DNA from: Octopus sinensis
Taxonomy: Eukaryota
Assembly (NCBI RefSeq): GCF_006345805.1
Contig: NW_021836150.1
Span: forward strand, 117,177 to 181,176
Length of the DNA: 64,000 bases
Reading direction: 5' to 3'
Shown: piece by piece, positions 18,677-64,000 of the stretch
Numbering within the stretch: the stretch's first letter is position 1
How the letters are laid out: every line of letters begins with the position of its first letter
The notes under the pieces: model-generated
Told to the model about the DNA's origin: nothing
The model's database searches: none
What the model saw: only the letters and a program-made list of their open reading frames with translations
Translations under genes and position numbers: made by a program

Positions 18677-19055
18677 TTTTTACTTGTTTCAGTCATTAGA
18701 CTGCTGCCATACTGGGGTACCAGCTTGAAGAACTTTTAGCTGTATGAATCGATCCCAGCCCTTTTCCTCTTTTGTTAAACCTGATACTTATTCCATCGGT
18801 TTCTATTGTCAAAAGCTAAGTTATGGGGATGTGAACACACCAACACAGGTTCTCAAGCAGTGATGGAGGACAAACAGACAGACACACACATGCACACATA
18901 CACAACGATCTTCTTTTAGTTTCCGTCTACCAAATCCTCTCACAAGGCTTTTGCTGGCCCAAGGCTATAGTAGAAGACACTTGCCCAAGGTGCCATGCAG
19001 TGGGACTGAACCTGGAACCATTTGGTTGGGAAGCAAGCTTCTTACCATACAGTTA
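18677..19055 (-). mobile_element. tRNA-derived SINE (family B)
   Basis: Homologous to the copies at 28759, 33098, 43198, 54774 and 56852. Head contains GGTTCAGTCCC (B box) followed by GCACCTTGGGCAAGTG. Confidence 0.85.
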
Positions 19056-28261: not shown

Positions 28262-28758
28262 ATCTACAATATCATTTATAGGTGTACAGTACTTGCGTCC
28301 TGGATTTCAGTCCTTTAAAAGTAACATCTGTGTAATAGTAAAACCCAGAAATATATACCCTACAAGTCTAGTATAAAAATGTGTGTATTGAGAGAGAAAG
28401 AGAGAAGGGGGACAGACAGACAAACAGGGAGAAAAAACAGGCATTATTAAAAACACAAATTTCCTGTACTACACTCCATCCAGTTGAAATCTAATTTGCA
28501 TTATTTTGTTATTAACTATTCAGTTGCTAATTAATCAGCTGAAGATTGAAAACAATTTAGTTGTTGATAGTTCAGTTATATCTACCATTTCCTTTCTCTA
28601 TTTCCTCTCACAAGAAATAATACACATCAACTGCTAAAAATTAGAGTTAGTATTAAAGTTTCATAATATACATCAACATTCTTATTTACTAGCTGTAAAA
28701 TGTTTCTCCTGAAGCCTTGTAGTTTACTATGATAGAAGAATATTCTTTCTTTCTTTCT

Positions 28759-29134
28759 TTAACTTGTTTCAGTCATTTGACTGCAGCCATGCTGGAGCAC
28801 CGCCTTTAGTCAAGCAAATCGACCCCGGGACTTATTCTTTGTAAGCCCAGTACTTATTCTATCGGTCTCTTTTGCCGAACCACTAAGTGACGGGGACGTA
28901 AGCCCACCAACATCGGTTGTCAAGCAATGCTAGGAGGACAAACACATACACACACATATATATATACATATATACGACAGGCTTCTTTCAGTTTCCATCT
29001 ACCAAATCCACTCACAAGGCATTGGTCGGCCCGGGGCTATAGCAGAAGACACTTGCCCAAGATGCCACGCAGTTGGACTAAACCTGGAACCATGTGGTTG
29101 GTTAGCAAGCTACTTACCACACAGCCACTCCTGT
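28759..29134 (-). mobile_element. tRNA-derived SINE (family B)
   Basis: Near full-length homologue of the other family B copies. Confidence 0.9.
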
Positions 29135-29347
29135 GCCAATATGTGAATAAAAATAGAAAGTTTATACAGAAAAATTTAGAATGTTTGATAGAAGATCTGC
29201 TAATTATTTCTTTTTACTGCATTTTTAACTAAAAAGTATATATTTATTGTTTTCATCACTTATGTGGCTTTATTAAGTTCTTTTGAGTAAAACTGAAAAT
29301 AGACAAAAAAATGAGAGAAACAAAGAAAGCAAAACAGATAGGGAGAG

Positions 29348-29387
<40 letters not shown>

Positions 29388-29428: not shown

Positions 29429-29557
29429 AGAAAACCGTAACTTTGATTACATGGCTGACTGCGTTAGCTACCCCGTTGTCTGCAACACACTCATAGAGGC
29501 CATTACAGTAACGGGAAATGTTGCGGATCATCAAAACTTCTCCAGTCATGCCTATCC
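29429..29557 (-). CDS. Internal exon, C-terminal half of an Ig domain of a lachesin/IgLON-like adhesion protein
   Basis: Acceptor tatgttgtgttccag, donor gtaagt, 129 nt, phase 1-1. Encodes (R)IGMTGEVLMIRNISRYCNGLYECVADNGVANAVSHVIKVTVF with the Ig E-F strand motif L.I.N......G.YEC.A.NG. Confidence 0.92.
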
Positions 29558-29611
29558 CTGGAACACAACATAGAAGACATGTATTCAGGCCCTCTCCAGT
29601 CATGCCTATTC
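29558..29611 (-). CDS. Possible in-frame 54-nt alternative 5' extension of the exon via a duplicated acceptor
   Basis: Second acceptor tatattgtattacag|GAATAGG lies 54 nt upstream. The reading IGMTGEGLNTCLLCCVPG has no stop. Usage is unverified. Confidence 0.35.
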
Positions 29612-30117
29612 CTGTAATACAATATACAACACTTAGTCAGAAACAGAATCACCACAAACATCGATACACAAGACGATAACAAAAAAAAAAAATAACGACA
29701 AGGAAGAAACTTAAGATCAATAGAACGATATCCCCAGAACAATGTGAAGAAACTATTTGCTTGAAAACCTAGGAATATTTCCTAACAGTACATACACATC
29801 GTAAAATATCTGATACAATAATATTGTTAGGTTAATGATTCTATGTTTATTAAAGGAGACAACGCTGTCAATTTTACAGTAAATATTGGTAACTGAAGTC
29901 TTACTAAAATAGTGTGAAATTTATAATATAAGATGCTTATATTGTATGCAATCTAACAGTGACAGTTGAAATATTACAGTTAATATTAATGATTTAAGTG
30001 TTGCTATTTGTGAATGCTGACGGAAAACCGTGGTGGATGAAGCTCCACATTTATTACATAGAAAATGATGAACTGATATATATATATATATATGCTTTTA
30101 TATACATATATATAAAA

Positions 30118-30304
30118 GCATGATGGATCACTAGCGACAACACATTCTTTATTTTCTCTCCTTGTTTCTCTCTGTGTTCCTTTCTGTGGAAGAGTGTAGG
30201 CTCGAAACATTAAAGACTTTTTCACTTCCCGAGCGTTAAACTAATACATCTGTTTGTTGTCTACACCACCTGTCTTCATCTTTTGTTTTTTTAGTGAATT
30301 CTTC

Positions 30305-30308
<4 letters not shown>
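30118..30308 (+). mobile_element. Short repeat between (AT)n tracts carrying a small hammerhead-like motif (Penelope-like-element associated)
   Basis: Contains the motif at 30180-30215. PLE assignment is inference. Confidence 0.45.
30180..30215 (+). ncRNA. Degenerate minimal hammerhead-like motif
   Basis: CTTT-CTGTGGA-A-GAGT(GTAG)GCTC-GAAAC-AT-T-AAAG: stem I CTTT/AAAG, stem II GAGT/GCTC. Core has U at position 6. Confidence 0.45.
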
Positions 30309-30383
<75 letters not shown>

Positions 30384-30400
30384 TAGATAGATAGATATAT
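30308..30400. repeat. (AT)n-(AGAT)n compound microsatellite
   Basis: Direct reading. Confidence 0.95.
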
Positions 30401-31313
30401 AAAGACATTGTTATTAAAAGAGCTTGTAAACACAGAAATGAACATTTATATAAGATCACTTATTGCTGCAATAATATGTGAACATTAAAAAAAAAAAAAA
30501 ACCCACATTGATTGTGATTTCTTATAGAATTAATCCATTTCAGTATTCATTGATAAATTGCTAACAGAACCTCACCTCATTAATATACAAGTGCCATGAA
30601 TCTAAGTTCTATTAACTACAAACTTGCTAATCTTTATCATCTAAGATCAATTTATTTCCACAAGATTCATTCCTATGCTGGTGCATTTCTCAAGATATTC
30701 ATCATGTGTCTGAAGGTCTGTGAAAATTAATTGAGTTTTATCTACTTATTGCTTCCAAAGGCATAAAAAAATGTAAGAAACAAACTCTACTTCTTTTGAT
30801 TATGACCTAAGCAATATTTGTATGATCATCTCTATTCCAAGTACAATAGTTAACCTACTAGTTTACAATCCAATTTTATAACCCTGGCTGGTTTTACCCT
30901 TTAAGAATTCCATTACATCACTACAGATTACTTCAGATAACGGCAATTCTGCATTATCACTACTATAGAATTAATACTTCAACAATCCTATTTTATCACC
31001 ATAGCTGACTTAACAAACCACTAAACTTATTTTATCTCTATATAGTTGGATTTAAAATCTATCAAACCTATTTTAAGACTTATTAATATTCTTAATTCAT
31101 GAAAATAGGAAACTACATTCTTAAAATCCTAACCTATTATTATAGTTGCATTTACAAATCTGACCATATACTCTCATCAAAGCCAACAGCTCAGTTAAAC
31201 GATTCCAGAATATGAAAGCAATGAAAACAAATTCAATTTGAAAGGCATATGATATTGGATATCATAATAATTATTCCTATATTGCAAAGACAATAAGATT
31301 GGATAGTTTAGAT

Positions 31314-31351
<38 letters not shown>

Positions 31352-31353
<2 letters not shown>

Positions 31354-31645
31354 ACTCTGCTGTTGAAGATGATGTATGAGCATTCAACTTTTGCCAAACG
31401 AACTGCACAAATGATTTGTTTATAATGGTCAAATGTCTGTGCAACACATTAACTTACTCTCCCCATCAAGTTGGTGTTGTTTGAACAGGTGCATGGTGTA
31501 CCACTCATCAGGAGTTGAAGTGATTGCAGAGCAATGTAAGATAAAATGTTTTGTTCAAGAACATAAAGCATCACCTTGTCTAGAAATTGAAATCACAATC
31601 TAGCAATCATGAGTGCAACATATTAAATACGAAGCCATGCACCCT
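31352..31645 (-). mobile_element. tRNA-derived SINE (family E)
   Basis: Reverse-complement homologue of 946-1240. Confidence 0.7.
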
Positions 31646-31739
31646 CACCATATATATATTAGTATTTGTTTTTATGTTCACTTATGATAAAAACAATTTT
31701 ACAATAATCTTAAGGGTGACTCCATGCCTTTGTAGAGTA

Positions 31740-32380
31740 AAAGTTTATTAATCTTTAACAATAGTATTGACAGTGACTTCGAAGTATCAGCCAGCTAAAC
31801 CTTCATTAGACTGTGATGCATTAAGTTAATCATGGGTTTATATAGCCTCTGCTGAGATAAATTTTTTTTGCAGATTTGTGGTGTTCGGTTGAATGGTGAT
31901 TAAACTTCAAATTAAGCTGTGATGGTAAGGTGTTGTTGAGAAAATTTTATTGATTAAATTTGAGTTTATGCCGTTCAGAATTTATTCATGTGCTTAGAAA
32001 TTTGTAAACAGGTGTGTATATTTAGATGTCTCAGCTTCAGGTCATGGATTAATTGGTAGTGGTTCACTAAAAAGAAGTGGGTAGGTAGAGGAAGTTTTTT
32101 GGTCAGTGGATGTGTCATAAGTTTGAATTATTATTGGTTTGATTGGATTTAATTCCTTGCTTTGGCAACGTAAAGGTCAAAGTTCTAAGTTTAGTTCAGC
32201 ACTTAAAAGTCTTAGTAATCTTGTAATGGAACGGCATAAACTCATCCACTGACCAAAAAACTTCCTCTACCTACCCACTTCTTTTTAGTGAACCACTACC
32301 AATTAATCCATGACCTGAAGCTGACACATCTAAATATACACACCTGCTTACAAATTTCTAAGCACATGAATAAATTCTGC
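31740..32380 (-). mobile_element. Possible Penelope-like element remnant with a 137-bp inverted duplication
   Basis: 31976-32113 is the near-perfect reverse complement of 32245-32380. Degenerate hammerhead-like motif at 31770-31814. Weak resemblance to a GIY-YIG C-terminus. Confidence 0.4.
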
Positions 32381-32687
32381 AAGCTACTTTTCCATATGCC
32401 ACTAATGTTATTCAGGAAAACATTCAGTCCTATAGGGCCTATATAGCTTGAGAGGAGTGTCATCTCATGTTCCATTTTCATGTTGCTAAGAGTTTGAATG
32501 GATATCAAATGATATCTTTCCAAATGCTCTGAGAGTTTCAAAATTTGGACTGGCCCCTTTTTATGAACCTTGAAAAATGAAAGACAAATGAAATCTTGGT
32601 GTGATTTGAACTTCAAGAACAGTGAGTTGGAATAAACACCATGAGGTAGTCTATCTAGCTTGCTACTAATATATGAATTAGTTTGTG

Positions 32688-32690
<3 letters not shown>

Positions 32691-32746
<56 letters not shown>
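32691..32746. repeat. (AG)n microsatellite
   Basis: Direct reading. Confidence 0.95.
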
Positions 32747-32751
<5 letters not shown>

Positions 32752-32818
32752 CACGTAAATTTATTTACTCATGCATATATTTACATAATAAAATAAAAAA
32801 AATATAAACATATATATA

Positions 32819-33050
32819 CATCATCATCATCATTTAACGTCCGCTTTCCATGCTAGCATGGGTTGGACGATTTGACTGAGGTCTGGCGAACCAGACTCCA
32901 ATCTGATCTGGCAGAGTTTCTACAGTTGGATGCCCTTCCAAATGCCAACCACTCCGATAGTGTAGTGGGTGCTTTTACATGCCAGTTTGGTGGTACTGGC
33001 AATGACCACATCCAAATGGTGCTTTTTACATACCACCTGCACAGGAGCCA
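32819..33050 (-). mobile_element. Family A RTE-tail retroposon
   Basis: Homology to the other family A copies, (CAT)n on the plus strand. Confidence 0.85.
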
Positions 33051-33097
33051 AAACATGTGTGTGTATATATATATTTATATAAATATATATACATATA

Positions 33098-33445
33098 CTC
33101 TTTTACTTGTTTCAGTCATTTGACTGCAGCCATGCCGGACTACTGCCTTTAGTCAAACAAATCAACTCCAGGACATATTCTTTGTAAGCCTAATACTTAT
33201 TCTATACGGGAATGCAAACACACCGACATCAGCTGTCAAGCGATGGTGGGGGGACAAACACACATACACATATATATCCAACAAGCTTCTTTCAGTTTCC
33301 GTCTACCAAATCCACACACAAGGCTTTGGTCAGCCTGATGCTATAGTGGAAGACAACTGTCCAACAAGGTGCCATGCAATGGAACTGAACCGGAACCATG
33401 TGGCTGGTAAGCAAGCTTCTTACTGCACAGCCACTCTTGCACCTA
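33098..33445 (-). mobile_element. tRNA-derived SINE (family B)
   Basis: Homology to the other family B copies, with an internal deletion. Confidence 0.85.
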
Positions 33446-34828
33446 TATATATATATTGAGAAGAAGTGGGGGACTGCACACATATGATTGCTCTCTCTCT
33501 CTCTCATATGTACATAGAGAAAAAAAGGAGAGAGAAGCCTTGAATATGTGAGACAAATAGCAATAATTTAGTTAAGTGGAAGAGAAACATATAAATGAAA
33601 AATAGATGAGAGAATGAGAGATGGTGGGGTTGAGATGGAGAGTCAGAAATTTATCAAACTTCAGTAAAATATTTAGTTTTCATAAATGTATTTTTTTCTC
33701 CCTTTATTACAGGATGAATTTGATTTTTATACCTTATCTTTTAATGCCAACGTATATGTATTATCATTGATTTTCAATAAACTTTGTATAAATGGGAAAA
33801 TTTTTTGAATATATAGTTCAGTGTTATTTTTGGCTTGTCTGGTCTAATAAATTCTATTGAATAGTAGAAGAGACATATAAAAGAAACAGCAATGTAATAA
33901 CCTTTTCACATAAGAATAAATATTACTAACCTAAAGAAAAGTAAAGAAAAATATACAGAAAATTTATTAACAAAAAACAAACAAACTATTAACTACCTAA
34001 CTTTAATAAAATTATGTTAAGATAAAATATTTACAAAAACAAATGTCATTAAAAATAAAAAAACTAATGAGGAAATATTTTTTAAAAATATACTTTAAAG
34101 ATCTTTAAATGAGGATTGTAAAAATATATTTAAGAAATTAGTCAATAACAAAAGAAGTGTAAATAGTGAAAAATGCTGGAGATATCTTAAATTGAATGTA
34201 ATAAATGAGATATGCCAAAGGTTTAGCAGGAAATTTTCTCCTTTGCAAGTTAAATATGGAAGAATTATTTTGATAAGAAGTGGGGAAAAAGAGGTGAAAA
34301 TAGAAAAAAAAAGAGAAAGCCTAAATCCTTTATTTTTCTGATGCCATCTATCTCCTTTTCCTCCAAATGTCTTTATTTCCTTTTCAATTCTTAAACATTT
34401 TTTTTTTAGCAGTTCCATTCTTTTAGCTTTGCAGATATTTCAGTGTTACTGACTACCACTGAGGTTGATGAAATCCCCTTCCTTGAAATTATTATACATA
34501 TTTTATGGAAATAAAATGTAAAATATAATAGATTTCTTGTACAACATTTTAAAATGTAGTTTTAGATTGATTTATGATAATAGTTGTGAGCAAAGAAAGA
34601 AAACCATCACCTACAAATCTATTTTTCTGTAAAAGCTTCACTAGTCACTACTACTATATGTGGAGCTTTTCTTTTATATACTTAGTAATAAACCACTTCT
34701 AAGATAACAATTTCTCCAACATGTAGACTGTGTGAATTTTTGCTAGTATAGCTTTGTGTTATATCAGAAGAAGATTAGTAAAGAAACAGCAGTTCATATT
34801 TTAGATAGGCTTTATTTATATCTTTTTA

Positions 34829-35216
34829 CTAGCAGTATCGCCCAGTGTTGCTCGGGTTTGCTTCAACCCTTTAGAATTGGAATTTTTGAACAGTAAAAAT
34901 TTTGCATTATGTAGCTTGTTATTCTCTTTAAATACATTTTTCTGGTTGAAATACACCGAAAAATGGCAACACAGAAGTAAAAAAATCATAAAAAATAGGG
35001 ATTTTCATAGAAAAAAAGCACCTTTTTGATGTAAATAATTTTTTGTCTTAACATGGTCCAATTTGATTTTTCTCTTACGGAAGGAAGAGCAAGCCTTCTT
35101 CTATCATACTCTCAATTTTGGTCAACTTGTACCACAGGGACTCGGAGGAGATAGTGTTAGTTGAAGGCTAACAAACCTGCCATACACAGACAACTTCAGC
35201 TTTATATATAGAGAGA
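34829..35216 (-). mobile_element. Non-autonomous Helitron
   Basis: Minus strand A|TC start, subterminal hairpin CCCGAGCAACACTGGG, CTAG|T end. Confidence 0.8.
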
Positions 35217-36303
35217 TTATGGAAGGGCATGGGGTGTAGTGAGTAGAAGATACTTCAATATACGATTGAAAATTTTGGGGTCTGTGTAAAGGTTAAAGCA
35301 AACTTGATACCAGTAGGATTTTAACATAATGAGATTAAATCAAATATTAATTTAAAACATTAGCAGAAGGCCTCACACTTTTGAGGAGAGATAGTCCATT
35401 GTATCAACTACAATACTTGATTGGTACTTTATTTTAGCAGTTTAGAGGATAGTTAGTACTGATGAACTTGTAGGCCCTCCCAGAATGATGCAATAGATAT
35501 TCAGCTAGTTCAGATGTAAGTCAATATTTTCAGGAAAAACATTGCTGAGAGAAAATTCTAAAGAGAATCGGTTTTGAGAGGAAGTGTCAAGGGCAGGATC
35601 TGGTAGTGATGATAATGAAAATAGAAACAAATGCATCTAGTGGGCTTGGTGGAAATGCTGCACAGTTATCAAGTTAGAGTAAGAGAAAAGTATGAACTAA
35701 AAGTTGAAAAGTTTGATGACATATATGAGACACTGGCTTTTTTCTTTTCTTTTTTTTGGGGGGGGGGCCCTATCAATACTAATCTGCCTGAAACTGTCCC
35801 TGTTTTTGATACAAAGCCTGTTTTAGAATGTTTATATTTAAATTAAAACATTCCATAATTTTATGTAAGACACTTTGTTAAATTATATTTTAAGCATGAA
35901 ATTAATAACAACAAAGTTATTTTCTAAATGCTACCAAACTCTTGATTATTTTAAAATTGAATTAAGAGTTATAGACAGTGCCATGTATTTCATTAAGAAT
36001 ATGGTCTTAAGTGAGTTGCCTTAGGGAAATACATAGATAAAATATCATGTAGTGACAGACAGCAACATCTATGCATTTTGTTATTATATATGAACACTAT
36101 GCTTTGTTATGCCATATTTCTGGAGTTTTATATTTACAATGGAATTGTTCAACGACAAATCATACTTCTATTCCATTACTAAAAGCCAACATATTTTTAT
36201 TTCTGCTTTTGAGAAAAATCTGAAATCCTTATAAATAAATCATTGGTTTGTATATGCACGTGAGAGCACATACACACACACACACTAAAGAGTAGAGCAG
36301 TAA

Positions 36304-36441
36304 TATAGTTGCATGCAGTTAAATTAGATGTATGGTCATAGAGTGACCAAAGGTTTTGCATCCATAATGTCTAACGCTTTACGTATGTGAAACCACTGGT
36401 CACTCTATGGCCAGACACATATCTAACTGCATATAACTATA
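36304..36441. repeat. Small fold-back element
   Basis: Arms TATAGTTGCATGCAGTTA...CATAGAGTGACCA and TGGTCACTCTATG...TAACTGCATATAACTATA. Confidence 0.8.
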
Positions 36442-36551
36442 TATATATATAATTGAAAAATAGGATCAAGTCTTTATAAGAATTTATCAAGTAGTTAGTG
36501 TGAAAAACCTCATAAGGGAAAAATCCATCAATTATTCCTCTTAAATATATG

Positions 36552-36727
36552 TATTTATATTAAGGGCATTACTATTCATAAATGCCTCATGCTAGGAGGG
36601 ACTCAAAGTCAAAACTAGCATAATAAATAAACATTGTACAACTTGTTTATTTATTATGGTAGTTTTGACTTTAAGAGTCCCTCCTAGCATGAGGTATTTA
36701 TGTATAGTAATGCCCTTAATATAAATA
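36552..36727. repeat. Near-perfect 176-bp palindrome
   Basis: TATATTAAGGGCATTACTAT...AAACA-TTGTACAA-...TGTTT...ATAGTAATGCCCTTAATATA, about 85-bp arms with few mismatches. Confidence 0.9.
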
Positions 36728-37303
36728 AATGAATATACACACACACACACACACCATGCCTAAGGTTCTTAACTTGGTGGTGTCATTAAGGGTGCAGATG
36801 TGACAAATAGCATGTCATACATATTTTTAAGCTTGGCAGAATCCACCCCTCTCCACCTTTGACCTTAGTAGGGTTTTTTCTAGCTGAGTTAGAAAAGAGA
36901 ATAGACCCAAGTATTTAACACATTTGTTATTAACTGTGAGAGGATGAAAATCAAGGATTTACACACAGTACCTGTTTTAACATCTCTGCTAATTGGCTAC
37001 TGATACATCCCCCCACACAGATACATATATAAATACACACATATATACATAAACGCACACACACACAATATTATACAGCTATATCTATTTGCAAATTCAG
37101 AGAAATATATACATTACAAACATAAATGAATAAACACACACATAATACATATAGACAAACATGTATTATACATATATAACAACTTAATGTGTAATCAGGA
37201 TATAGCAAAAAATTTAATTGTAAGGTAAATTATACAAAGATATAATATATATTGTAGATAATATTAAGTTATTAATACTTAAGAGACATCAAGAAAATCT
37301 TAC

Positions 37304-37453
37304 TTTCATTTTGCTTTTGGTCGCTTATAGACCTGCGATACCAGGTCACATTAGGATGCGGTGTTCCACTTACATTGCAGACAAGGCTTATTGTATCCCC
37401 CTCTTTTGCAGTTTTATCTCTACTTGACAAATCTGCGTTAAGTGTTGGCTGGA
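37304..37453 (-). CDS. Internal exon, N-terminal half of the same Ig domain
   Basis: Acceptor ttttaaatttcag, donor gtaaga, 150 nt, phase 1-1. Encodes QPTLNADLSSRDKTAKEGDTISLVCNVSGTPHPNVTWYRRSISDQKQNE (EG..ISLVC.VSG.P.P.VTW motif). Joins in frame (A+GG=Arg) to the 29557 exon. Confidence 0.93.
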
Positions 37454-37561
37454 CTGAAATTTAAAAAAAACCAAAAAAAAACATTAAAATACTGAAGAAA
37501 AAAAAAACAAAAAAAAGTAGCTTAAATTTTAGACAGCTGACCAAAGAATATAATTCCAAAT

Positions 37562-37700
37562 CCAACATCATTATCATTTTTGTTTAATGTCTACCTTCCA
37601 TGATAGCATGAGTTGGATGGTTTGACAGGAGCCAATCAGGTAGAAAACTACACCAGGCTATTTTATGGTTGGATGCCCTTCCTAACATCAACAACCCAGC
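37562..37700 (-). mobile_element. Degenerate family A copy
   Basis: CTTCCATGATAGCATGAGTTGGA...GGATGCCCTTCCTAAC. Confidence 0.6.
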
Positions 37701-41106: not shown

Positions 41107-43197
41107 TATACATTCAAATAAAAAATTTTTATCTCAGCTATTTCACATAGTGATGGTAGTTGTTCTGTTGTACTGAATTATTTTATAGTTGTACCATGCT
41201 ATTTTATGCTCTTCTTCCAAATGTTTGACATTAATTTATTTCCACATCAGAGTTTTAATTAACTCGCTGAAAGATTTTGGTCAAGTGAGTTATTATACAC
41301 TGATTAATGTGCTTGAAGATCTGAGAAAAACCCAACTAACCTGTCACTCCCACTGCCAGCCAACTTCTCTGCAGAGAGAAAACAGGAAGTGTTTCTTTTC
41401 TATGTAGTTAAAATATTAGTTTTAAGGTCTAAAAGATCACAGAACTTACAACCCATTTTATTTTTTTCACAAATTTATTTTCTATAGTTCAAGTTTATTT
41501 TTTTAACTTCTAGAGATTGTACAGACAGTGAAATATCATGTTATAACTACTATATGTGTTTACTTGTGTTTCTATTGCATATCCTGTTGAAAAGTTGCTG
41601 AAGTTTTAATTCAGATTTTGGCCAAAAGAGTTACTCTACTAAACTAATCCACTTGTTTGAAGAGTTGAATCCAAGTTCTTTTCTTCCATTCATATCTAGT
41701 AGCTTAGTGTTTCCCATTAAGTAACATTATATCTACTATGTCTCATCCACCAAAACCCCTTGCTATTTACTTTGGTTCTTCCGATGAAGAACTGGTTTCT
41801 TTGGGAATTCTCTATCAACCGAGGAGGTCATATAAACAGCATGGAAAGCCCTCATCTCCTCCAACTAAATAGTAGTAATTCTCATACAGGTACAGCAAGT
41901 ATAAACTCTTTCAACATCTCCTTTCATTAGAAGCTTGACTTGCAAGAATCAACAGCTAAATCTCACTTAAATTGACCCCATCAGAGGATGGGCACAACAA
42001 AAAGAATTCTGATCATAGGTTTGTTCAATCAGAATAGATCTAGGCCAAGCCACTATCGCCATCACCACCATCACCACCTTGCATATTTCACATTACATTT
42101 TATTAAAGTCTAGAGAAAACGTTTCTGCTGTATGCAGAGAAATGAAATAAAACTTCCTATTTAGATATAAACATAAATTTTAACAATGAAACTATTCATC
42201 TATCAATGCCTATAGTTTGGTAAGTAGTATTGAGAATGGTATAATTGAAAAATAATTTGCTGTTTTGATATGCTATGATTTCTAGTATCCTACCTATTAA
42301 TGATATTTAACATGTATTACAATAGAGAAGGAAATGACTAAGATATTGTTGCAGTTGTTGAATTCTAAAATACCTCCTTTAAATTCACATACGCGGTACT
42401 TAGGAACATGTGTGTGCCTCTTAACAAATGCTAGAAAATTTGAAAATAGATGATTCTGATGTGAACTTTAATGATTATTTAAAAACAAATAAAATAATTG
42501 CTATGTTTCATACTTCTAAATGCAAATTTCACAAAAGGAAATACAGATTAGGTTCAAGATGAAAATCATAAATATGTGTGTGCATGTGTATTCGTATTAA
42601 TTATTCTTACACAGTATTTCATAAATATAACTTAAGGCAAAATAAGGCAGCATAACTGTCATTAGAAGCCAAATATTCCAATTGTTGTATACAAGACAAC
42701 TACGTTACAGTTACATCAAAGTGTTCCTGAATAACTTAAAATATTAAATTAGTATTTAGCACTTATAAACAATTCGATGGCTAAACTAAAAGTATCTACC
42801 TACTTTTGTACTATAAGGGTATTGCAAATAATTATAAAGTCGCTCAAACTACCAGCAAACACTCTGCTCAAACACTGTGTTTAACACAGATTTGCACACA
42901 CGCACACACACACAAAGTAATAGACATAAAAATTGCAGCCGAGACTGAAAAAAATTCCTTTTAGAAAAAATTTTTTTTAGAAATTTTAGAAATAATTTAT
43001 GAAAACAAAGTCGTAAAAAATAAAAACAAGGATGACTGAGTACCATAAAACAAATAGATAAGGTTGCTATAACTGAAAGTGAGAGTTAAACATTAATATG
43101 TTATTTGCTACGTTAATACTTTGTATGTATGTATGTAAGTATGTATATGTACATACATACATATATGTGTATATATATAAATATATATATATTACCC

Positions 43198-43567
43198 TTT
43201 TACTCTTTTACTTGTTTCAGTCATTTGACTGTGGCCATGCTGGAGCACCACCTTTAATCGAGCAACTCGACCCGGGACTTATTCTTTGTAAGCCAAGTAC
43301 TTATTCTATCGGTCTCTTTTGCCAAACCGCTAAGTGACGGGGACATAAACACACCAGCATCGGTTGTCAAGCAATGCTAGGGGGACAAACACAGACACAC
43401 ACGCGCATCATCATCATCGTCGTTTAACGTCCGTTCTCCATGCTAGCATGGGTTGGACGGTTCGACCGGGGTTCTGGGAAGCCAGAAGGCTGCACCAGGC
43501 TCCAGTCTAATCTGGCAATATTTCTACAGCTGGATGCCCTTCCTAACGCCAACCACTCCGTGAGCGC

Positions 43568-43598
<31 letters not shown>

Positions 43599-43763
43599 TA
43601 CGACGGGCTTCTTTCAGTTTCCGTCTACCAAATCCACTCACAAGGCTTTGGTCGGCCCGAGGCTATAGTAGAAGACCCTTGCCCAAGATGCCACGCAGTG
43701 GGACTAAACCCGGAACCATGTGGTTGGTAAGCAAGCTACTTACCACACAGCCACTCCTGCGCC
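43198..43763 (-). mobile_element. Family B SINE with a nested family A insertion (43407-43563)
   Basis: B sequence is interrupted in its internal microsatellite. The A insert is flanked by GCGCAT on both sides. Confidence 0.9.
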
Positions 43764-43824
43764 TATATATATATATATATATGCATGCATACATACAAAC
43801 ATAATGCACTGGTTATAGTTTTGC

Positions 43825-53850: not shown

Positions 53851-54773
53851 AATCTTACACATGTGCATTAATACTATATGTATACACTTTGAACTGCATA
53901 GTAAAGTGCTTTTTACTTTTACTATAATTTGTAGTCTAGGTCAATACCATATGTCACATCGTATTTAAAGTAATTTTTTTTTTTAATAATTTCTATATAT
54001 TTTTGGTGGTTTTCTGTATTATATTTTGATATGACTTTATTGAGACAGGTAGTCTTATTCCAGTATCACACAGTACTATAGACATGTGAATAGAACTTTG
54101 AAATATATGATACCATATTTGATAAGAACTTCCATTAAAACAGTTTCAGTGTTTCTATCTGTATATATAAATGCATGTACTGTACACACATATACATGCA
54201 CACACAGAACACTATAATGGTAATTATGGTCTACACAGGGACTGTAATACACAGAATGAAGAGTGTTCAAGACTACATAAGGACTATAATATAAATGACC
54301 AAAAGTTTTGCAAAATAAGCTTCAGGAAAGTAGAGGTCAAATCAACATAAATCAGAGATCAAATCAACTTCATATTCACCAAACAGTGAGATAGAGACAA
54401 ACAGCTGTGAATATTCAGTTTCTTCCTCCAGGAGAAGAATATTCTCTTCAACATAGGCTTAAGATTAATGACAAGGTTAAGAACTACAGAAACCTGTAGA
54501 CACAATTTGGAGAAGGAGCATATGGAAGCTGAAAATACTCCAGCCAGATGTAGGCCCATAGAAATACATAGTTACAGATATGTTGTGAAGAAAGATGCAA
54601 AAGTGACCTATTACACAGAAGACAAATGAAAGTGTCTACAAGACAATTTGCTGCATGTTACAAACCAAATGTGTGGATGGAGCGGGTTCCATCCCATCAT
54701 GAAGTGACCTGAAAGTGAAGAGACAAGCTACAAAATAATGCGAGTAGTAAGGAACAATGTAAGGTAACTAGAA

Positions 54774-55185
54774 GGCGCAGGAGTGGCTGTGTGGTAAGTA
54801 GCTTGTTTACCAACCACATGGTTCCGGGTTCAGTCCCACTGCATGGCACCTTGGGCAAGTGTCTTCTACTATAGCCTCGGGCCGACCAAAGCCTTGTGAG
54901 TGGTTTTGCTAGACGGAAACTGAAAGAAGCCCGTCGTATATATATGTATATATATATATATGCGTGTGTGTGTTTGTGTGTCTGTGTTTGTCCCCCTAGC
55001 ATTGCTTGACAACCGATGCTGGTGTGTTTATGTCCCCGTTACTTAGCGGTTCGGCAAAAGAGACCGATAGGATAAGTACTGGGCTTACAAAAGAATAAGT
55101 CCCTGGGTCGAGTTGCTTGATTAAAGGCGGTGCTAAAGCATGGCCACAGTCAAATGACTGAAAAGAGTAAAAGAGTAAAGAGAGA
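54774..55185 (+). mobile_element. Full-length family B SINE
   Basis: GGCGCAGGAGTGGCTGTGTGG (A box), GGTTCAGTCCC (B box), AAAGAGT-repeat tail. Confidence 0.9.
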
Positions 55186-55299
55186 AAGAGAAGGGCTCAT
55201 AGAAAATTTACATCAGATGAGTTTAGTAAAGAGAAAAATATAAAGTAAAAGATTTGCCAATGAACTGTGAAGGGAAGATATATGCAAGGCATTCTGAAT

Positions 55300-56640: not shown

Positions 56641-56851
56641 AACAGAAGAAATACTCTAAAACAATAAAATTGAAAAGCACAATTCATCTCTCTCCCTCTA
56701 CACACACACACAGAGGTTTTGTCAGATTATGAGAATACTGTCACCTAAGAAAGTGAATACATAAAGAGAAGAATCGTATCAAAATTTAGAGTTAAGATTA
56801 ATGAGTTTAAGAATTCTTCAAGCAATATTAGTAGTTCTTATATGTATATAC

Positions 56852-57254
56852 TCTTTACTCTTTCACTTGATTCAGTCATGTGACTGTGGCCATGCTGGAG
56901 CACCGCCTTTAGTTGATCAAATCTACCCCAGGACTTATTCTTTGTAAGCCTAGTACTTATTTTATTGGTCTCTTTTTGCCAAACCGCTAAGTTACGGGGA
57001 CGTTACGGGGACGTATACATATCAGAATCGGTTGTCAAGCGATGTTGGGGGGACAAACACAGACACACAAACACGCACATACACATATATACGACGAGCT
57101 TCTTTCAGTTTCCATCTACCAAATCCACTCACAAGTCTTTGGTCGGCCCGAGGCTATAGTAGAAGACACTTACCCAAGGTGCCATGCAGTGGGCCTGAAC
57201 TCGGAACCATGTGGTTCGTAAGCAAGCTACTTACCACACAGCTACTCCTGCGCC
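56852..57254 (-). mobile_element. Family B SINE
   Basis: Homology to the other family B copies. Confidence 0.9.
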
Positions 57255-58024
57255 TATGTATATGTATATAAACGTAAGTGTACATATTACTATTTGCAAG
57301 AATGTATGCATTTATAAGTGAAAATGCATTGGCGTACATTTATTGGTAAGATCATGTACAGATGCCTGTTTATAGTAGTAAGAATATCTGCATGTTATGT
57401 GTGTAAATATGCACCCAGCGGTAAGGGATTACGTAGTTTATGTAGACTGCAAATTATTTTCTCGAAAAGCTAAGATGACTGATTGGAAATCCATTATGAG
57501 TGAGTATTCACTCCAGTCTGATAACTGAAGTAGTTAGAAATGACCAAAATACTTCCATGCATTTAATCTGGCTTATAGGTTCTAATTACAGTGTTTAGCT
57601 TTTAATAGGTGAGTTAGCTTACTGTCTTTTTGGCATCACTATGATTATCATCCAGTAATATTGGTAATATAACTCCCATTTTCTTGTATGGACTGAATAG
57701 TTTCTACTTATCGGCTATTCCATTAATTCTTGATAGTCTATTGCTATTTACATGCATATCATCATCATCATCATCATGTATCATTTGTTTAGTATTCATC
57801 TTTCAATAGTGACATGTTCGTACATATGCAAATTACAATATTTTTCTATATGCCTCAATCTTTAATCATCCTATTCATGAAACTCAGCATTCTGAGGCCC
57901 TATTTACGGAACATTCAGTTTTACTTGAATATACAAATTTATGAGAGAAAGAAATTAGAAATTTGAATTATATTCCTAAATGTGCTTATCATGAGTTGTT
58001 ACAGAAAAGATAATTATTTATTCG

Positions 58025-58243
58025 ATCGTGGCCGTCTGCCAGCCCCATCTGGCACCTGTGCCGGTGGCATGTAAAAAGCACCCACTACACTCACGGAGTG
58101 GTTGGCGTTAGGAAGGGCATCCAGCTGTAGAAACACTGCCAGATCAGACTGGGCTTGGTGCAGCCTTCTGGCTTCCCAGACCCCAGTGGAACCGTCCAAC
58201 CCATGCTAGCATGGAAAGCGGATGCTAAATGATGATGATGATA
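58025..58243 (+). mobile_element. Family A RTE-tail retroposon
   Basis: Homology to the other family A copies, (GAT)n tail. Confidence 0.88.
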
Positions 58244-61091
58244 AAAAAATATTAATACAGATATAATACACTTTTCTGATTTAACCTTGTCTTGTTTCTA
58301 AAATACTTATGAATGGGATGTTCTTTGCTGCAATCAGATACTTCAGCTTAAATTGAACTTATTCAGACATCTGAATTTACAAAGACACTTTACTGCACCA
58401 TAGAATCAACCACTATGATAATGAAGATGGTGACAGCATCTCTTATTTAATATTAGAGAAAAGGAAATGTGATGCTTCCATACCTTTCTTAAAATTACAA
58501 GATAATGTAGATAACATTGATTGTTTCAAAACATTATCTGCCTGCCTACCTACATACCTATCTATCTAGCTACACACAGATGCAAATATACAAAGGAAGA
58601 CAGGCAGACAGATACATATTTTGTATTAATAGCTCTGTTCAGAAGAAATAGGAGGAAAAAAAGTGACTTTCTGTTTACCTAGACATGAAATTGCATAACT
58701 AGTCCATATCTCATTGTATGCTAACTTCTTGATGCATAATTAATGATAGAATCAGAGTTGCAAGTTAGGTAAGCTAAGTCTTAAATATAATATATAATAA
58801 TTGTAATAGTAATAGTCTATGGCAACTGTCTTGAGAGACAGTGGAGTTTTGCCTCACTGATTAATTAAGATTCAGGTTGTACCCCAACAGCTGATGGGCA
58901 AGTGATTTCTCTATTCTTGTTGCCTCTTTCCCCAGTTGAATACAAGTGATACCTCTAAGGTGTGAACTTAGTCTCTTTGAAAGGCTTTCTTGAGTTACCC
59001 AGAAATCAAAAACATTTTTTGAGGCTCATTAATGAACTCCTGATTAGCATGTTTGGTACCAATTTGGTTGCAGGAATTAATAAAGTATAAAGGAATCTAC
59101 TCTTGGTTTATGATAAGGTTTACTACCTTACCCTTGTCTCACAAGGTGTAAGGCTTTTAGCTGGGTATCTAACCTGGGACAGTGTCTCATATATGGTACC
59201 CTCAGCAAAAGCCAGATAATCTCTGGACTTATTTCATGCAGGATTATCATGCATCAAAGAAGTGGCCGAGGTACTACCCACTCTTTTATAAAATAATTAG
59301 TGTATGTTAGTAACATTTTTGTGACATATTACAAGTACTTATTTCATGAAAGTTAAAATCAACTTAAGATTTGAATAACATTGTAGGGAGATAGCATGCT
59401 ACTGTTTCTGCCCTGTCTACTTAGCTGTCATTAATATTGGCAGTACTAATGATAAGAATAACAGCATTCTCATAATTAACTATAAGTCATTAGAAAGAGT
59501 GGGAGGACTATTTAAATTTATGGCATTCACTTTATATCAATCACTACAACTCCTAATTCTCAGTGGTACTAGTTCAAAAACAGCAATACCATAAATAGCA
59601 ATAAAAATATTCGTATAGCCATACAGTCAGTGATTGTAATCATGAATGCAAACACATGTACACACACACGACTGCATATATATATATATATATACATGTG
59701 TGTGTGCTTATATATGTCTTATGTATATATAAAACACACACAAGTACATATATACTGATTTTCTTTAGTTGGACAGTTTTGAAGCTGTCGTTCCAAAAGT
59801 TTGGGTTATAAGGGGTGTCTTAAAAATTAATTGATTCCATTAGCTGGTAAGTGATGACTGACACACACTTTAGCACTTCAAAATATGGAAATAAATTTTC
59901 ATTAGTCAATGATTTATTTACACCAAAGAAAAAAAAAATCCTTATTTAAATGTACTGAACCAAAATATCCTTTGAACAGTAGTAACATTTCAGAAAATTA
60001 TGCCTGCTTTCAAGTAAAGATTGTGCATAAAAGTGATGACATTCAGTTTGCTAATGACTGGATAACATCAACACAAGCAAAGTAGATACATTTCTTGAAG
60101 GATGTGTCACGTCAAAGAACAACATCCATTATACATGTTGTTTTGTATTAGTACATTAAAAAAACTCAAATATAGATACATCCAAAGTGATTTAAAAAAT
60201 GTTACCATCTGTTTACGGCTATTGTAAAGAAATAGTTCTCTGGTAAAGAGATTCTTCCTGTCAAAGGGTCTCCTTTAGACAATTGCAGTGTCTTTACATT
60301 TCTTTTCTGCTTTGCTTCCTTTTATTTTGATACAGGTAGTAGAAAAGGACACACAAAACAAGGTACACAGTTTATGATATTAGTTTAAAGCTAGAAAGAA
60401 GTTTGGGGCAGTGGCTCTTCTTCAAAGAAAAGCAGAGATGAAAATCAGAAATATAAGTAATGAAAAAACAGGAAGAGAAAAAATAATCCCATTGAACGAT
60501 ATTACAGAATTAGTCAAAGAGGTATGGACATGTGTGTGTGTGTATTTATGTTTGTATGGGGATGGTGTGAGTCCAAATAGGTGTGTTGGTGTGCATGCAT
60601 TGCTATATGGAATCAATGGTGAATGGAAGAAAGTGAAGAAATTAGATTTCACTAAAGAGAAGCTTAAAGGGAGACAATGGGTTGGAGTCAGTAGTTATTT
60701 GGTAAAGAGAAGTATATTTAAATGTGGATATAGAACTACAGAAACAGGCTTAATGTGTATGGTGTACACATTCATGTGCACATAGGGCTATGTGTATGTG
60801 TAGGGTAGTGTACATATGTATGTGGGTAATGGAGGGTGTATTCATAAATGTTGTCTGTATATGTTTTTGTAGGTTTCCTTGTATGTTCCTTGTATGTTCT
60901 GGAAGTGCACTGCAGTGAGTGTGTGCATCTGTAGTGCAATTTGCGTATGCTGTATTTGTTCAAATAGGTGTGTATGTGTGCATATGTGTAAGTGCATGTA
61001 GTGTGTTGCTGTGCAGCAATATAGTGGATGGAAATGAGGTGGCGTTTATATGTAGGGAACAGAAATGTAATAGTGTGTATTTATTGCTGTT

Positions 61092-63193: not shown

Positions 63194-63403
63194 GCTAACA
63201 AATTATCCGTGCCGGTGGCACGTAAAAAGCACCCACTACACTCATGGAGTGGTTGGCGTTAGGAAGGGCATCCAGCCGTAGAAACATTGCCAGATCAGAC
63301 TGGGCCTGGTGCAGCCTTCAGGCTTCCCAGACCCCAGTTGCACCGTCCAACCCATGCCAGCATGGAAAGCGGACGCTAAACGATGATGATGATGATGATG
63401 ATG
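63131..63403 (+). mobile_element. Chimeric retroposon: tRNA-Asp, 13-nt linker and family A tail
   Basis: The whole unit is flanked by TSD ATGTATTA (63123-63130 and 63404-63411). Confidence 0.85.
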
Positions 63404-64000
63404 ATGTATTATGTGTTATAAAGCTAATTTTAGTGACTATTATATTATTTTGTGAAGCATTATCTTCAGCATGATTCTAGAATTCGATTACCATGGCTTA
63501 TATATTTATATAATGTTCATATCTCTATATAAGAAGTTGTTTCTTCATTAAAGAATTATTCCAAAGTCTTTAACCTCTTCCAATAACAAATAAAAGGTAG
63601 ATTACAGGACTGAATTCCTTAGAAATGAATGAATGGTTGACTTATAGACTTACTGTGCCTATATTTAACCTTATATAATAATGCAACTAAAGAATGAAAT
63701 ACAGGAAGAAGGTGAAATTGAGATCAGAGTATGAAGGATATGATCAGCAATTGTTCACTAGCAGATAAATTATAGATTATATTTATTGAGGGTAGGGAAT
63801 AAGAGCAGGTCAAATCACTGCAGATGCAATAAATATAATTTTACAAGGTAAATAATTTACAAAGATGAGAATTTACATGTAATAATAGTTTAATAAGGAA
63901 CGCTTACGCAACTAAGATATAACTATACAAAACTGAAGACTCGGTGTAGTGCATATTGAAGTAATCTTTTAACTATGGAATGTTAAAGGGCACTTCAACT

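What the first reader, a model, noticed from the sequence alone, without database searches (positions are those of the whole stretch)
29539..29646. In-frame 54-bp tandem duplication of the splice acceptor of the Ig exon
Seen: intron end plus exon start is duplicated with period 54: tatattgtattacag|GAATAGGCATGACTGGAGAG upstream and tatgttgtgttccag|GGATAGGCATGACTGGAGAA downstream. Both AGs are intact, both give Arg at the junction (A+GA, A+GG), and the intervening 18 codons (IGMTGEGLNTCLLCCVPG) have no stop despite clear divergence. Inference: alternative acceptor choice could insert a loop with three Cys between the C and E strands of the Ig domain, altering adhesion specificity or disulfide/dimer chemistry.
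Basis: partly seen in the sequence, partly recalled or inferred. Interest (0 to 1): 0.7.

Follow-up and report, generated by a model that had tools for sequence, protein, structure and literature searches.

The report
Duplicated splice acceptor, octopus lachesin gene
A 54-base duplication of an intron-exon boundary in an octopus nerve-cell adhesion gene (lachesin/IgLON type) gives two in-frame splice acceptors; both products are already annotated in octopus and seen in cuttlefish RNA, so it is a real, ancient but ordinary kind of alternative splicing.

Summary
On the minus strand, the last ~29-31 nt of the intron plus the first 20 nt of the second half-exon of an Ig domain occur twice head to tail. 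The two AGs lie 54 nt apart, and both give Arg at the junction.

The two exons in the window match Octopus sinensis RefSeq 'lachesin-like' proteins exactly, and those models use the upstream acceptor (long form, +IGMTGEGLNTCLLCCVPG). O. bimaculoides RefSeq lists both forms, X1 (351 aa) and X2 (333 aa), which differ by exactly these 18 residues. Cuttlefish transcript assemblies (one run published as Sepia esculenta RNA-seq) contain both junctions and differ by exactly 54 nt. An intronless Argonauta paralogue carries a diverged copy of the insert and looks like a retrocopy of a long mRNA.

The unit therefore predates the octopus-cuttlefish split. It shows no synonymous change between the two (0/13 against 31/69 in the flanks). 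Structure models place the insert as a low-confidence loop between strand C and the D-E hairpin of Ig2.

The long form appears to be the commoner one, not a rare variant. The effect on adhesion or disulfide chemistry is untested. The isoforms are already in public annotation, so interest is modest.

The parts
37304..37453 (-). Exon A: first half of the Ig2 domain (QPTLNADLSS...SISDQKQNE + first base of the Arg codon). Acceptor is tttcag|TCCAGCC and donor is GAAA|gtaaga (GT at 37303-37302); phase 1 at both ends.
   Evidence: Sequence. Coordinates and translation. 100% tblastn match to O. sinensis XP_029657686.1 (P0288).
29612..37303 (-). Intron of about 7.7 kb that splits the Ig2 domain. Its 3' end carries the upstream acceptor.
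29592..29640 (-). Repeat copy 1: CTGACTAAGTGTTGTATATTGTATTACAG|GAATAGGCATGACTGGAGAG. It holds a consensus branch-point motif CTGAC (29640-29636, A at 29637, 26 nt from the 3' splice site), a weak T/G-rich tract (50% pyrimidine) and the upstream AG (29613-29612).
29558..29611 (-). The 54-nt alternative segment between the two acceptors. It encodes (R)IGMTGEGLNTCLLCCVP(G) and is included when the upstream AG is used.
   Evidence: Present in O. sinensis, O. vulgaris and O. bimaculoides X1 proteins and in cuttlefish long transcripts.
29538..29588 (-). Repeat copy 2: CTGAATACATGTCTTCTATGTTGTGTTCCAG|GGATAGGCATGACTGGAGAA. It holds a candidate branch point CTGAA (29588-29584), a better pyrimidine tract (70%) and the downstream AG (29559-29558). 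Its 'intron' part is coding in the long form.
29429..29557 (-). Constitutive part of exon B: second half of Ig2 (IGMTGEVLMIRNISRYCNGLYECVADNGVANAVSHVIKVTVF). Donor is TTTTCT|gtaagt (GT at 29428-29427), phase 1.
   Evidence: Pfam Ig_3/I-set match for exon A plus exon B.

Best explanation
The window holds the two exons that encode the second Ig domain of the Octopus sinensis 'lachesin-like' gene, or that of a very close relative. The protein is a three-Ig, apparently GPI-anchored neuronal adhesion molecule of the IgLON/DIP/lachesin group.

Before octopuses and cuttlefish diverged, a stretch of about 52-54 bp was duplicated in tandem. It spanned the branch point, the pyrimidine tract, the AG and the first ~20 nt of the second Ig2 exon. 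This left two complete acceptor units 54 nt apart, in frame, competing for the same donor at 37304. Splicing to the upstream AG (exon start 29611) yields a protein with an extra 18-residue loop carrying three cysteines. The loop sits between strand C and the D-E hairpin of Ig2. Splicing to the downstream AG (29557) yields the loop length seen in many, though not all, molluscan relatives.

Shown here: the duplication, both junctions in RNA of a cuttlefish, both isoforms annotated in O. bimaculoides, and extreme nucleotide conservation of the unit. Inferred: that both sites are used in the window's own species, that the choice is regulated, and that the loop changes binding or introduces an unpaired cysteine.
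For: Repeat anatomy and significance.

Identity of the gene: the window exons match P0288 and P0289 (O. sinensis XP_029657686.1 and XP_029657685.2) at 100%. Pfam gives Ig_3/I-set. The closest solved structures are DIP-alpha 6efy (7e-49) and OPCML 5uv6.

RNA evidence: cuttlefish contigs L002, L003, L007 and L008 are long and L006 is short. They join GAAC|GGGTAGG... or GAAC|GAATAGG... and are otherwise 99.7-100% identical. L006 comes from run SRR20545811, listed as Sepia esculenta larval RNA-seq in PMC10466719.

Age: the same unit (VGMTGDGLNTCVLCCVPG) occurs in cuttlefish and in a second decapodiform-like species. An intronless Argonauta paralogue (L004 2001-3209, 402 codons in one ORF) contains a diverged insert.

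Constraint: there are 0/13 synonymous differences in the unit against 31/69 in the flanking codons between octopus and cuttlefish, Fisher p = 0.001.

Structure: AlphaFold2 gives a D (ERIGMT)-turn-E (VLMI) hairpin at pLDDT >90 for the short form. In the long form the copy next to strand E keeps that hairpin, and residues 183-196 form a loop with pLDDT about 50-60.
Against: No RNA data for the window's own species were available, and O. sinensis RefSeq lists only long models. RefSeq isoforms are computed models whose supporting reads I could not inspect. The unit is not significantly more conserved than the rest of exon B (0/13 against 8/35), so part of the constraint may be a property of the whole exon. 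In the Argonauta retrocopy, which no longer needs the splice signals, 9 of the 18 insert residues and 2 of the 3 cysteines have changed. This argues that much of the conservation in the parent gene acts at the RNA level and not on the peptide. No genomic sequence from a decapodiform or Nautilus could be fetched, so the repeat structure outside Octopus is inferred from mRNA only.
Confidence: 0.85

Rival explanations
1. The upstream copy is an unused intronic decoy, its open reading frame is chance, and the downstream AG is the only real acceptor.
For: Being in frame and stop-free over 18 codons is expected by chance about one time in seven (my estimate from base composition). The Ig domain scores higher in Pfam without the insert. 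Many molluscan relatives, including the annotated Argonauta orthologue, have the short loop.
Against: Long-form proteins are annotated in three Octopus species and are assembled from cuttlefish RNA. The unit is 94% identical in nucleotides between octopus and cuttlefish. A retrocopy preserves the long form.
Confidence: 0.02
2. In the window's species the long form is constitutive. The downstream AG is now only an internal sequence, and alternative use persists only in other cephalopods.
For: Both O. sinensis RefSeq models and the O. vulgaris model are long. The upstream unit has the perfect branch-point motif CTGAC at -26 and is met first. Only long contigs were found in the second decapodiform-like species.
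Against: The downstream unit in the window keeps an intact CAG|G and the better pyrimidine tract (70% against 50%). The closely related O. bimaculoides has both isoforms annotated. Absence of a short model in an automatic annotation is weak evidence.
Confidence: 0.1
3. Both acceptors are used, but the 18-residue peptide has no specific function. The unit is conserved because it holds the splicing signals for the downstream site, and possibly RNA-editing-related structure. The loop is merely tolerated.
For: Synonymous sites are frozen (0/13), which protein-level selection alone does not explain. All of exon B is unusually conserved. The retrocopy lost 9 of 18 residues and 2 of 3 Cys. The loop is modelled at low confidence. 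Cuttlefish transcripts of this gene differ from each other only by A/G changes. A slower mutation rate near conserved editing sites is reported for coleoids (PMC8382921).
Against: The three amino-acid differences between octopus and cuttlefish are conservative (I/V, E/D, L/V) and all three Cys are kept. The retrocopy still keeps the C-V-P core. Cys-bearing alternative inserts recur at this junction in gastropod and bivalve relatives. No stable local RNA fold was found (z = -0.7).
Confidence: 0.25
4. The Cys-rich part of the unit descends from an ancestral molluscan micro-exon (gastropod SEFCPGT-type) that became fused to exon B, and not from duplicated intron sequence.
For: Gastropod isoforms insert ...SEFCPGTN before RIG..GEV at the same junction, which resembles ...LLCCVPG before IGMTGEV.
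Against: The part of the unit that encodes GLNTCLLCCVPG aligns with the real intron end upstream of copy 1 better than any of 241 controls or 5000 shuffles. It also lies in register with the duplicated exon start. The resemblance to FCPG covers only 3-4 residues.
Confidence: 0.08

Closest known systems
RefSeq isoforms of Octopus bimaculoides lachesin (XP_052822954.1 X1, 351 aa; XP_052822956.1 X2, 333 aa), plus O. sinensis XP_029657686.1/XP_029657685.2 and O. vulgaris CAI9720776.1
   Same: This is the same gene and the same event. X1 contains IGMTGEGLNTCLLCCVPG and X2 lacks it. The window's exons are 100% identical to the O. sinensis proteins.
   Different: The database entries are automatic models with no comment on the origin of the two sites. 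The tandem duplication, its age and the frozen synonymous sites are not annotated. Two literature searches found no paper on them: lachesin + octopus returned two unrelated papers, and the IgLON splicing search returned nothing on it.
Alternative 3' splice-site exons derived from constitutive exons (Koren, Lev-Maor & Ast 2007, PMC1876488)
   Same: One donor serves two competing acceptors more than 9 nt apart. The segment between the sites preserves the frame, and conservation around the alternative side is high.
   Different: That model creates the competing site by point mutation. Here the whole acceptor unit (branch point, tract, AG and exon start) was copied in tandem.
Tandem duplication of sequence containing a (proto-)splice site (Lehmann et al. 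2010, PMC2891723)
   Same: A short regional tandem duplication supplies a second splice signal next to the original.
   Different: The Drosophila cases duplicate coding sequence and turn one copy into a new intron. Here an intron-exon boundary was duplicated, and intron-derived sequence became optional coding sequence.
Mini-exon insert meA in Ig2 of the receptor phosphatase PTPdelta (PMC4423211)
   Same: A short alternatively spliced peptide forms a loop between two beta-strands of the second Ig domain of a neuronal surface receptor. In PTPdelta it sets ligand specificity. This is the best model for how the octopus loop might work.
   Different: It is a different protein family. meA is 3-9 residues produced from mini-exons, with no cysteines, and its function has been shown experimentally. 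None of that is shown here.
Other alternative inserts at the same intron of molluscan IgLON-like genes (Aplysia LSAMP X4/X5, Crassostrea OBCAM-homologue X1-X10, Mytilus LSAMP-like)
   Same: They sit at the same junction between ...KE and R/K-[IV]G..GE. Loop lengths range from 17 to 70 residues, and many inserts carry one Cys.
   Different: Those inserts show no repeat of the exon start, and apart from a short C-P-G resemblance to the gastropod insert (weighed under rivals) their sequences differ from the octopus unit. Their length patterns look like cassette exons, although I did not inspect any genomic sequence. Among the sequences examined, only the cephalopod lachesin orthologues and the Argonauta retrocopy carry the IGMTGE repeat.

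Membership tests
IgLON / DIP / lachesin ('Wirin') three-Ig GPI-anchored adhesion molecules | I-set-type Ig domain encoded by the window's exons | tested here: met
   Pfam Ig_3 1.2e-14 and I-set 2.6e-13 for exon A plus short exon B.
IgLON / DIP / lachesin ('Wirin') three-Ig GPI-anchored adhesion molecules | Signal peptide, three Ig domains and a C-terminal hydrophobic tail | tested here: met
   Seen in the full-length orthologue P0102. The AlphaFold2 model has helices at 2-14 and 420-437 and three beta-sandwich blocks. The O. vulgaris orthologue P0286 has the three Ig domains and the hydrophobic C-terminal tail, but its annotated N-terminus differs (sequence only). Only Ig2 lies inside the window.
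IgLON / DIP / lachesin ('Wirin') three-Ig GPI-anchored adhesion molecules | Closest solved relatives are DIPs and IgLONs over all three domains | tested here: met
   6efy DIP-alpha 7.2e-49 over residues 31-339; 5uv6 OPCML 4.5e-32.
IgLON / DIP / lachesin ('Wirin') three-Ig GPI-anchored adhesion molecules | GPI anchorage and homophilic or heterophilic binding through Ig1 | not testable with these tools
   This needs biochemistry.
Alternative 3' splice-site event | Two AG acceptors, each with its own tract, sharing one donor and preserving the frame | tested here: met
   AGs at 29613-29612 and 29559-29558, 54 nt apart. Both give Arg with the A at 37304.
Alternative 3' splice-site event | Both junctions present in RNA of one species | tested here: met
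   Cuttlefish contig L006 (short) against L007, L008 and L002 (long) differ by exactly the 54 nt. Both isoforms are annotated in O. bimaculoides.
Alternative 3' splice-site event | Both junctions used in the window's own species | tested here: inconclusive
   Only long models exist for O. sinensis, and no reads were available.
Splice site created by tandem duplication | Head-to-tail direct repeat spanning the intron-exon boundary, beyond chance | tested here: met
Splice site created by tandem duplication | Single-copy state in outgroups | tested here: met
   Among about 115 molluscan relatives, only the cephalopod lachesin orthologues and the Argonauta retrocopy repeat the IGM.GE motif. This rests on proteins only, and no Nautilus sequence was seen.
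NAGNAG tandem acceptors | Acceptors 3 nt apart | tested here: not met
   The spacing is 54 nt.
Tandemly duplicated alternative exons (Dscam-type mutually exclusive exons) | Each copy is a complete exon with its own donor, and one copy is chosen per mRNA | tested here: not met
   The upstream copy has no donor and runs straight into copy 2. The long mRNA contains both copies.

The most novel reading that the evidence does not exclude
The 54-nt unit is a regulated switch kept nearly unchanged since before octopuses and cuttlefish split (roughly 270 million years by my recollection of published estimates). It adds unpaired cysteine(s) to the Ig2 loop of a neuronal IgLON-like adhesion molecule. 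Cys-bearing alternative inserts at the very same junction in gastropod and bivalve relatives would then be the same functional device, reached independently. That would make it a general molluscan 'cysteine switch' controlling covalent pairing or partner choice of these receptors.
Probability: 0.15. Interest if true: 0.6.

Novelty: new member of a known kind. Interest (0 to 1): 0.35.

Why it matters
This is a clean, datable example of a short tandem duplication across an intron-exon boundary. The duplication turned intron sequence into optional coding sequence and created an alternative acceptor that has been kept across coleoid cephalopods. The gene belongs to the IgLON/DIP/lachesin group of neuronal wiring receptors. 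The affected loop is a site of splice variation in many molluscan relatives, so the two isoforms are reasonable candidates for differing in partner choice or oligomeric state. The practical value is modest, because the isoforms are already in RefSeq. What is added here is the origin, the age, the unusual conservation and a retrocopy that records the long mRNA.

Tried and rejected
- Tandem Repeats Finder did not report the repeat; the repeat finder and pairwise alignment did.
- The first word-indexed protein search, with the 92-aa domain, returned only one hit. That hit, P0001, is a 108-aa MetaClust entry identical to O. bimaculoides in this region and in the short form. I first read it as cDNA evidence. 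It is more likely an old gene model, so I do not count it as RNA evidence. No contig was on record for it.
- The single metagenome scan gave only an unrelated Ig locus at 29% identity.
- The exhaustive HMMER search was dominated by giant multi-Ig proteins but yielded the key orthologue P0102.
- Genomic loci of the Argonauta, O. bimaculoides and Acanthosepion pharaonis orthologues could not be fetched, because the genes span 116-265 kb. P0155 is not on record. The repeat could therefore not be compared at the DNA level outside the window.
- The pre-mRNA around the two acceptors shows no unusual fold (z = -0.70), so I dropped a structure-based switch.
- Searching with the Argonauta retrocopy found no orthologous retrogene in Octopus.
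- I considered NAGNAG acceptors and Dscam-type exon duplication and rejected both on anatomy.

Full report
**What is in the sequence**

The feature lies on the minus strand. An upstream exon (37453-37304) encodes the first half of an Ig domain and ends GAA A|gtaaga. About 7.7 kb downstream the intron ends in ...ctgactaagtgttgtatattgtattacag. The sequence that follows is GAATAGGCATGACTGGAGAGGGC CTGAATACATGTCTTCTATGTTGTGTTCCAG GGATAGGCATGACTGGAGAAGTTTTG..., and it runs on to a donor TTTTCT|gtaagt (exon end 29429).

The stretch tatattgtattacagGAATAGGCATGACTGGAGAG (29626-29592) recurs 54 nt later as tatgttgtgttccagGGATAGGCATGACTGGAGAA (29572-29538), 30/35 identical. The repeat finder gives 40 nt at 85% identity with spacing 54. 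With two 1-nt gaps the alignment reaches back to CTGAC/CTGAA. The shared 17-mer occurs nowhere else in the window, even with three mismatches, against 0.1 expected. The intron-derived halves alone are more alike than any of 241 T-rich CAG-ending controls or 5000 shuffles.

The duplicated unit is therefore a complete acceptor (candidate branch point, tract, AG) plus the first 20 nt of the exon. Both AGs are intact, both junction codons (A|GA, A|GG) are Arg, and the 54 nt are open only in the coding frame and one other frame.

**Which gene and which organism**

The two exons together form an Ig_3/I-set domain. An exhaustive profile search gave a 438-aa orthologue, P0102. Searching with it gave named relatives: lachesin in Octopus bimaculoides, lachesin-like in Argonauta hians, and LSAMP/OBCAM-like proteins across molluscs.

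The cluster look-up listed Octopus sinensis XP_029657686.1 and XP_029657685.2 and O. vulgaris CAI9720776.1. tblastn showed the two window exons to be 100% identical to the O. sinensis proteins and 98% identical to O. vulgaris. No other exon of the gene lies in the 64 kb.

The full-length orthologues have three Ig domains and a hydrophobic C-terminal tail, and the decapodiform ones also start with a signal peptide. Their closest solved relatives are Drosophila DIPs and vertebrate IgLONs. This is the 'Wirin' group of neuronal surface receptors reviewed in PMC10084454.

**Are both acceptors used?**

- Both O. sinensis models and the O. vulgaris model contain ...QNERIGMTGEGLNTCLLCCVPGIGMTGEVLMI..., so they use the upstream AG.
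- O. bimaculoides has isoform X1 (351 aa) with the 18 residues and X2 (333 aa) without them. An older annotation has the same pair at 287 and 269 aa.
- Independent of any annotation, Logan assemblies of sequencing runs hold 2-kb intronless contigs of the cuttlefish orthologue. The genomic gene spans more than 100 kb in Acanthosepion pharaonis, so these contigs are mRNA.
- L002, L003, L007 and L008 read GAAC|GGGTAGGCATGACTGGAGACGGCCTGAATACATGTGTTCTATGTTGTGTTCCAG GAATAGGG.... L006 reads GAAC|GAATAGGG.... Elsewhere L006 and L007 are 99.7-100% identical.
- L006 comes from SRR20545811, listed among the Sepia esculenta larval RNA-seq data of PMC10466719.
- Among the listed cluster members, long forms were seen on 18 contigs and short forms on 4. 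A second decapodiform-like species (run SRR27666068) gave 11 long contigs and no short ones. These counts are not quantitative, but they suggest the long form is not the minor one.
- The annotated Argonauta orthologue is short.

**A retrocopy records the long mRNA**

An Argonauta paralogue, P0156, is closest to Argonauta's own orthologue (60% identity). It is encoded by a single uninterrupted 1209-nt ORF inside another gene's intron (L004 2001-3209), whereas the parent gene spans 265 kb. It reads ...NEGIGMTEEDQDTPNQYCVPERGIAGEVLMIQ..., that is, a diverged 18-residue insert in the same register. This is best read as a retrocopy of a long-form mRNA. It is further evidence that the upstream acceptor was used in the octopod germ line. 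I did not find a poly(A) remnant or target-site duplications, so 'retrocopy' rests on the absence of introns.

**Age and constraint**

The unit is present in octopods and in two decapodiform-type species, so it predates their split. From memory that split is roughly 270 million years old; I could not retrieve the source.

Between the window and the cuttlefish mRNA, the 17 whole codons of the unit show three conservative replacements (I/V, E/D, L/V) and no synonymous change in 13 degenerate codons. The flanking codons show 31 changes in 69 (Fisher p = 0.001; p = 0.0005 against the second species). Exon A is 69% identical in nucleotides, the unit 94%, and the rest of exon B 89%. The whole of exon B is thus unusually constrained, and the unit is not significantly different from it (0/13 against 8/35).

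The upstream copy of GGC ATG ACT GGA is invariant in all three species, while the downstream copy varies at third positions. Frozen synonymous sites point to RNA-level function. Part of this is obvious, because the 3' 31 nt of the unit are the tract and branch region of the downstream acceptor. No stable local fold was detected.

In the retrocopy, which has no splicing to preserve, half of the insert and two of the three cysteines have changed while the neighbouring strands stay conserved. So much of the constraint in the parent gene is probably on splicing, not on the peptide. The C-V-P core survives in the retrocopy.

**The splice signals**

The upstream unit has the consensus branch motif CTGAC with its A 26 nt from the AG, but only 50% pyrimidines in its tract. 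The downstream unit has no strict yUnAy motif (best candidate CTGAA at -27/-26) but 70% pyrimidines and CCAG|G. Each unit is strong where the other is weak. That is the kind of balance expected for competing sites (inference).

**Where the insert sits in the protein**

- AlphaFold2 with an 80-sequence alignment models the short form (Argonauta P0154) with strand C at NVTWYRK. A D strand ERIGMT, a two-residue turn and the E strand VLMI follow, all at pLDDT above 90.
- In the long form (P0102) strand C and strand E are unchanged. The copy of IGMTGE next to strand E keeps the hairpin (VPGI is modelled as strand). ERV forms a short strand, and residues 183-196 (GMTGDGLNTCVLCC) form a loop at pLDDT about 50-60, below 50 at 188-191.
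More precisely, the insert lengthens the connection from strand C to the D-E hairpin.
- The models say nothing reliable about disulfides.

**Context in the family**

The same junction varies widely in other molluscan IgLON-like proteins. The loop from the strand-C tryptophan to strand E ranges from 17 to 70 residues. Gastropod isoforms differ by 8-residue inserts such as SEFCPGTN and SELCPGND (Aplysia X4 against X5). Oysters and mussels combine 23- and 25-residue inserts (Crassostrea isoforms X1-X10). Many of these inserts carry exactly one cysteine. Only the cephalopod lachesin orthologues repeat the exon start. The cephalopod solution appears to be an independent way of putting a variable, Cys-bearing loop at a site the family varies anyway.

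**Comparison with what is known**

- Mechanistically this is an alternative 3' splice-site event with the usual hallmarks described by Koren et al. (PMC1876488). These are a frame-preserving inter-site segment and high conservation when the sites are more than 9 nt apart. It differs in arising by duplication of the whole acceptor, not by a point mutation.
- Short tandem duplications that supply a splice signal are known from Drosophila intron gains (PMC2891723).
- The nearest functional analogue is the meA insert of PTPdelta. It is a spliced loop between two strands of Ig2 that sets ligand specificity (PMC4423211).
- The isoforms themselves are already public in RefSeq. Two literature searches found no paper describing them or their origin.

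**Verdict**

The long form is at least as prominent as the short one. The functional consequences are untested. This is a well-supported new example of a known kind of event, and interest is modest.

Noticed in passing
L004 2001-3209 (Argonauta hians BAAFZT010000015.1:822216-827424): An intronless 402-codon paralogue of the lachesin gene (GAB1600296.1) lies inside another gene's intron on the opposite strand. It carries a diverged long-form insert and is 60% identical to Argonauta's own orthologue. It is probably an expressed-type retrocopy that has kept its ORF. No orthologous copy was found in Octopus.
   Followed up: partly
Proteins P0157-P0269; same intron position as window 29612-37303: Across gastropod and bivalve IgLON-like genes this junction in Ig2 carries many different annotated alternative inserts of 8 to about 50 residues. 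Many have exactly one cysteine (SEFCPGT, DDHCLYT, PSCTYTF, EPCIYT). Another O. sinensis paralogue (P0164 against P0175) has an unrelated 27-residue insert at the same junction.
   Followed up: partly
L002/L003 against L006/L007/L008, codon 257 of the L007 CDS; cluster members P0283, P0285, P0278: Cuttlefish transcripts of this gene differ from one another only by A/G changes. These are GAC/GGC (D/G), and at the protein level K>R, I>V and N>S. This is the pattern expected from A-to-I RNA editing, which is common in coleoid neural mRNAs. It could also be polymorphism, or differences between Sepia species that fall in one 90% cluster.
   Followed up: partly
Proteins P0151, P0152, P0270, P0271, P0274, P0278, P0275, P0276: The decapodiform orthologue has several further splice variants. 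One is a 5-residue insert in Ig1 (NPNLM or EKKLM after ...SHK). Others are 9- to 18-residue variants just after the signal peptide (GKSMILQKN, VTGRSSSDDGEY...). There is also an alternative C-terminus ...HIERK that lacks the hydrophobic tail and may be a secreted form.
   Followed up: no
window 37540-37585 (minus strand), just upstream of exon A: P0001, a MetaClust entry that is O. bimaculoides-like, starts MEGDDNDVGFGIIFLV. This matches intron sequence here (..NDNDVGFGIIFF..) joined to exon A across an ~88-nt T-rich stretch starting g|gtcagc. In the window this frame has an upstream stop and no ATG, so it is probably a spurious first exon of an old gene model.
   Followed up: partly
window 28744-29137; also 54773-55189, 56851-57255, 33099-33436, 18785-19052, 43182-43401 and 43576-43779: A dispersed repeat family of about 400 bp (76-95% identity, both orientations) has one copy only ~290 bp downstream of exon B's donor. 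A second family of about 200 bp lies at 1245-1460, 58049-58266, 63211-63412, 32804-32984 and 43406-43564. Neither overlaps the duplicated acceptor.
   Followed up: no
window 29343-29387 and 30308-30401: A (GA)n microsatellite begins about 40 nt after exon B's donor, and a (TATA/ATAG)n array lies in the upstream intron. Both are ordinary low-complexity sequence.
   Followed up: no
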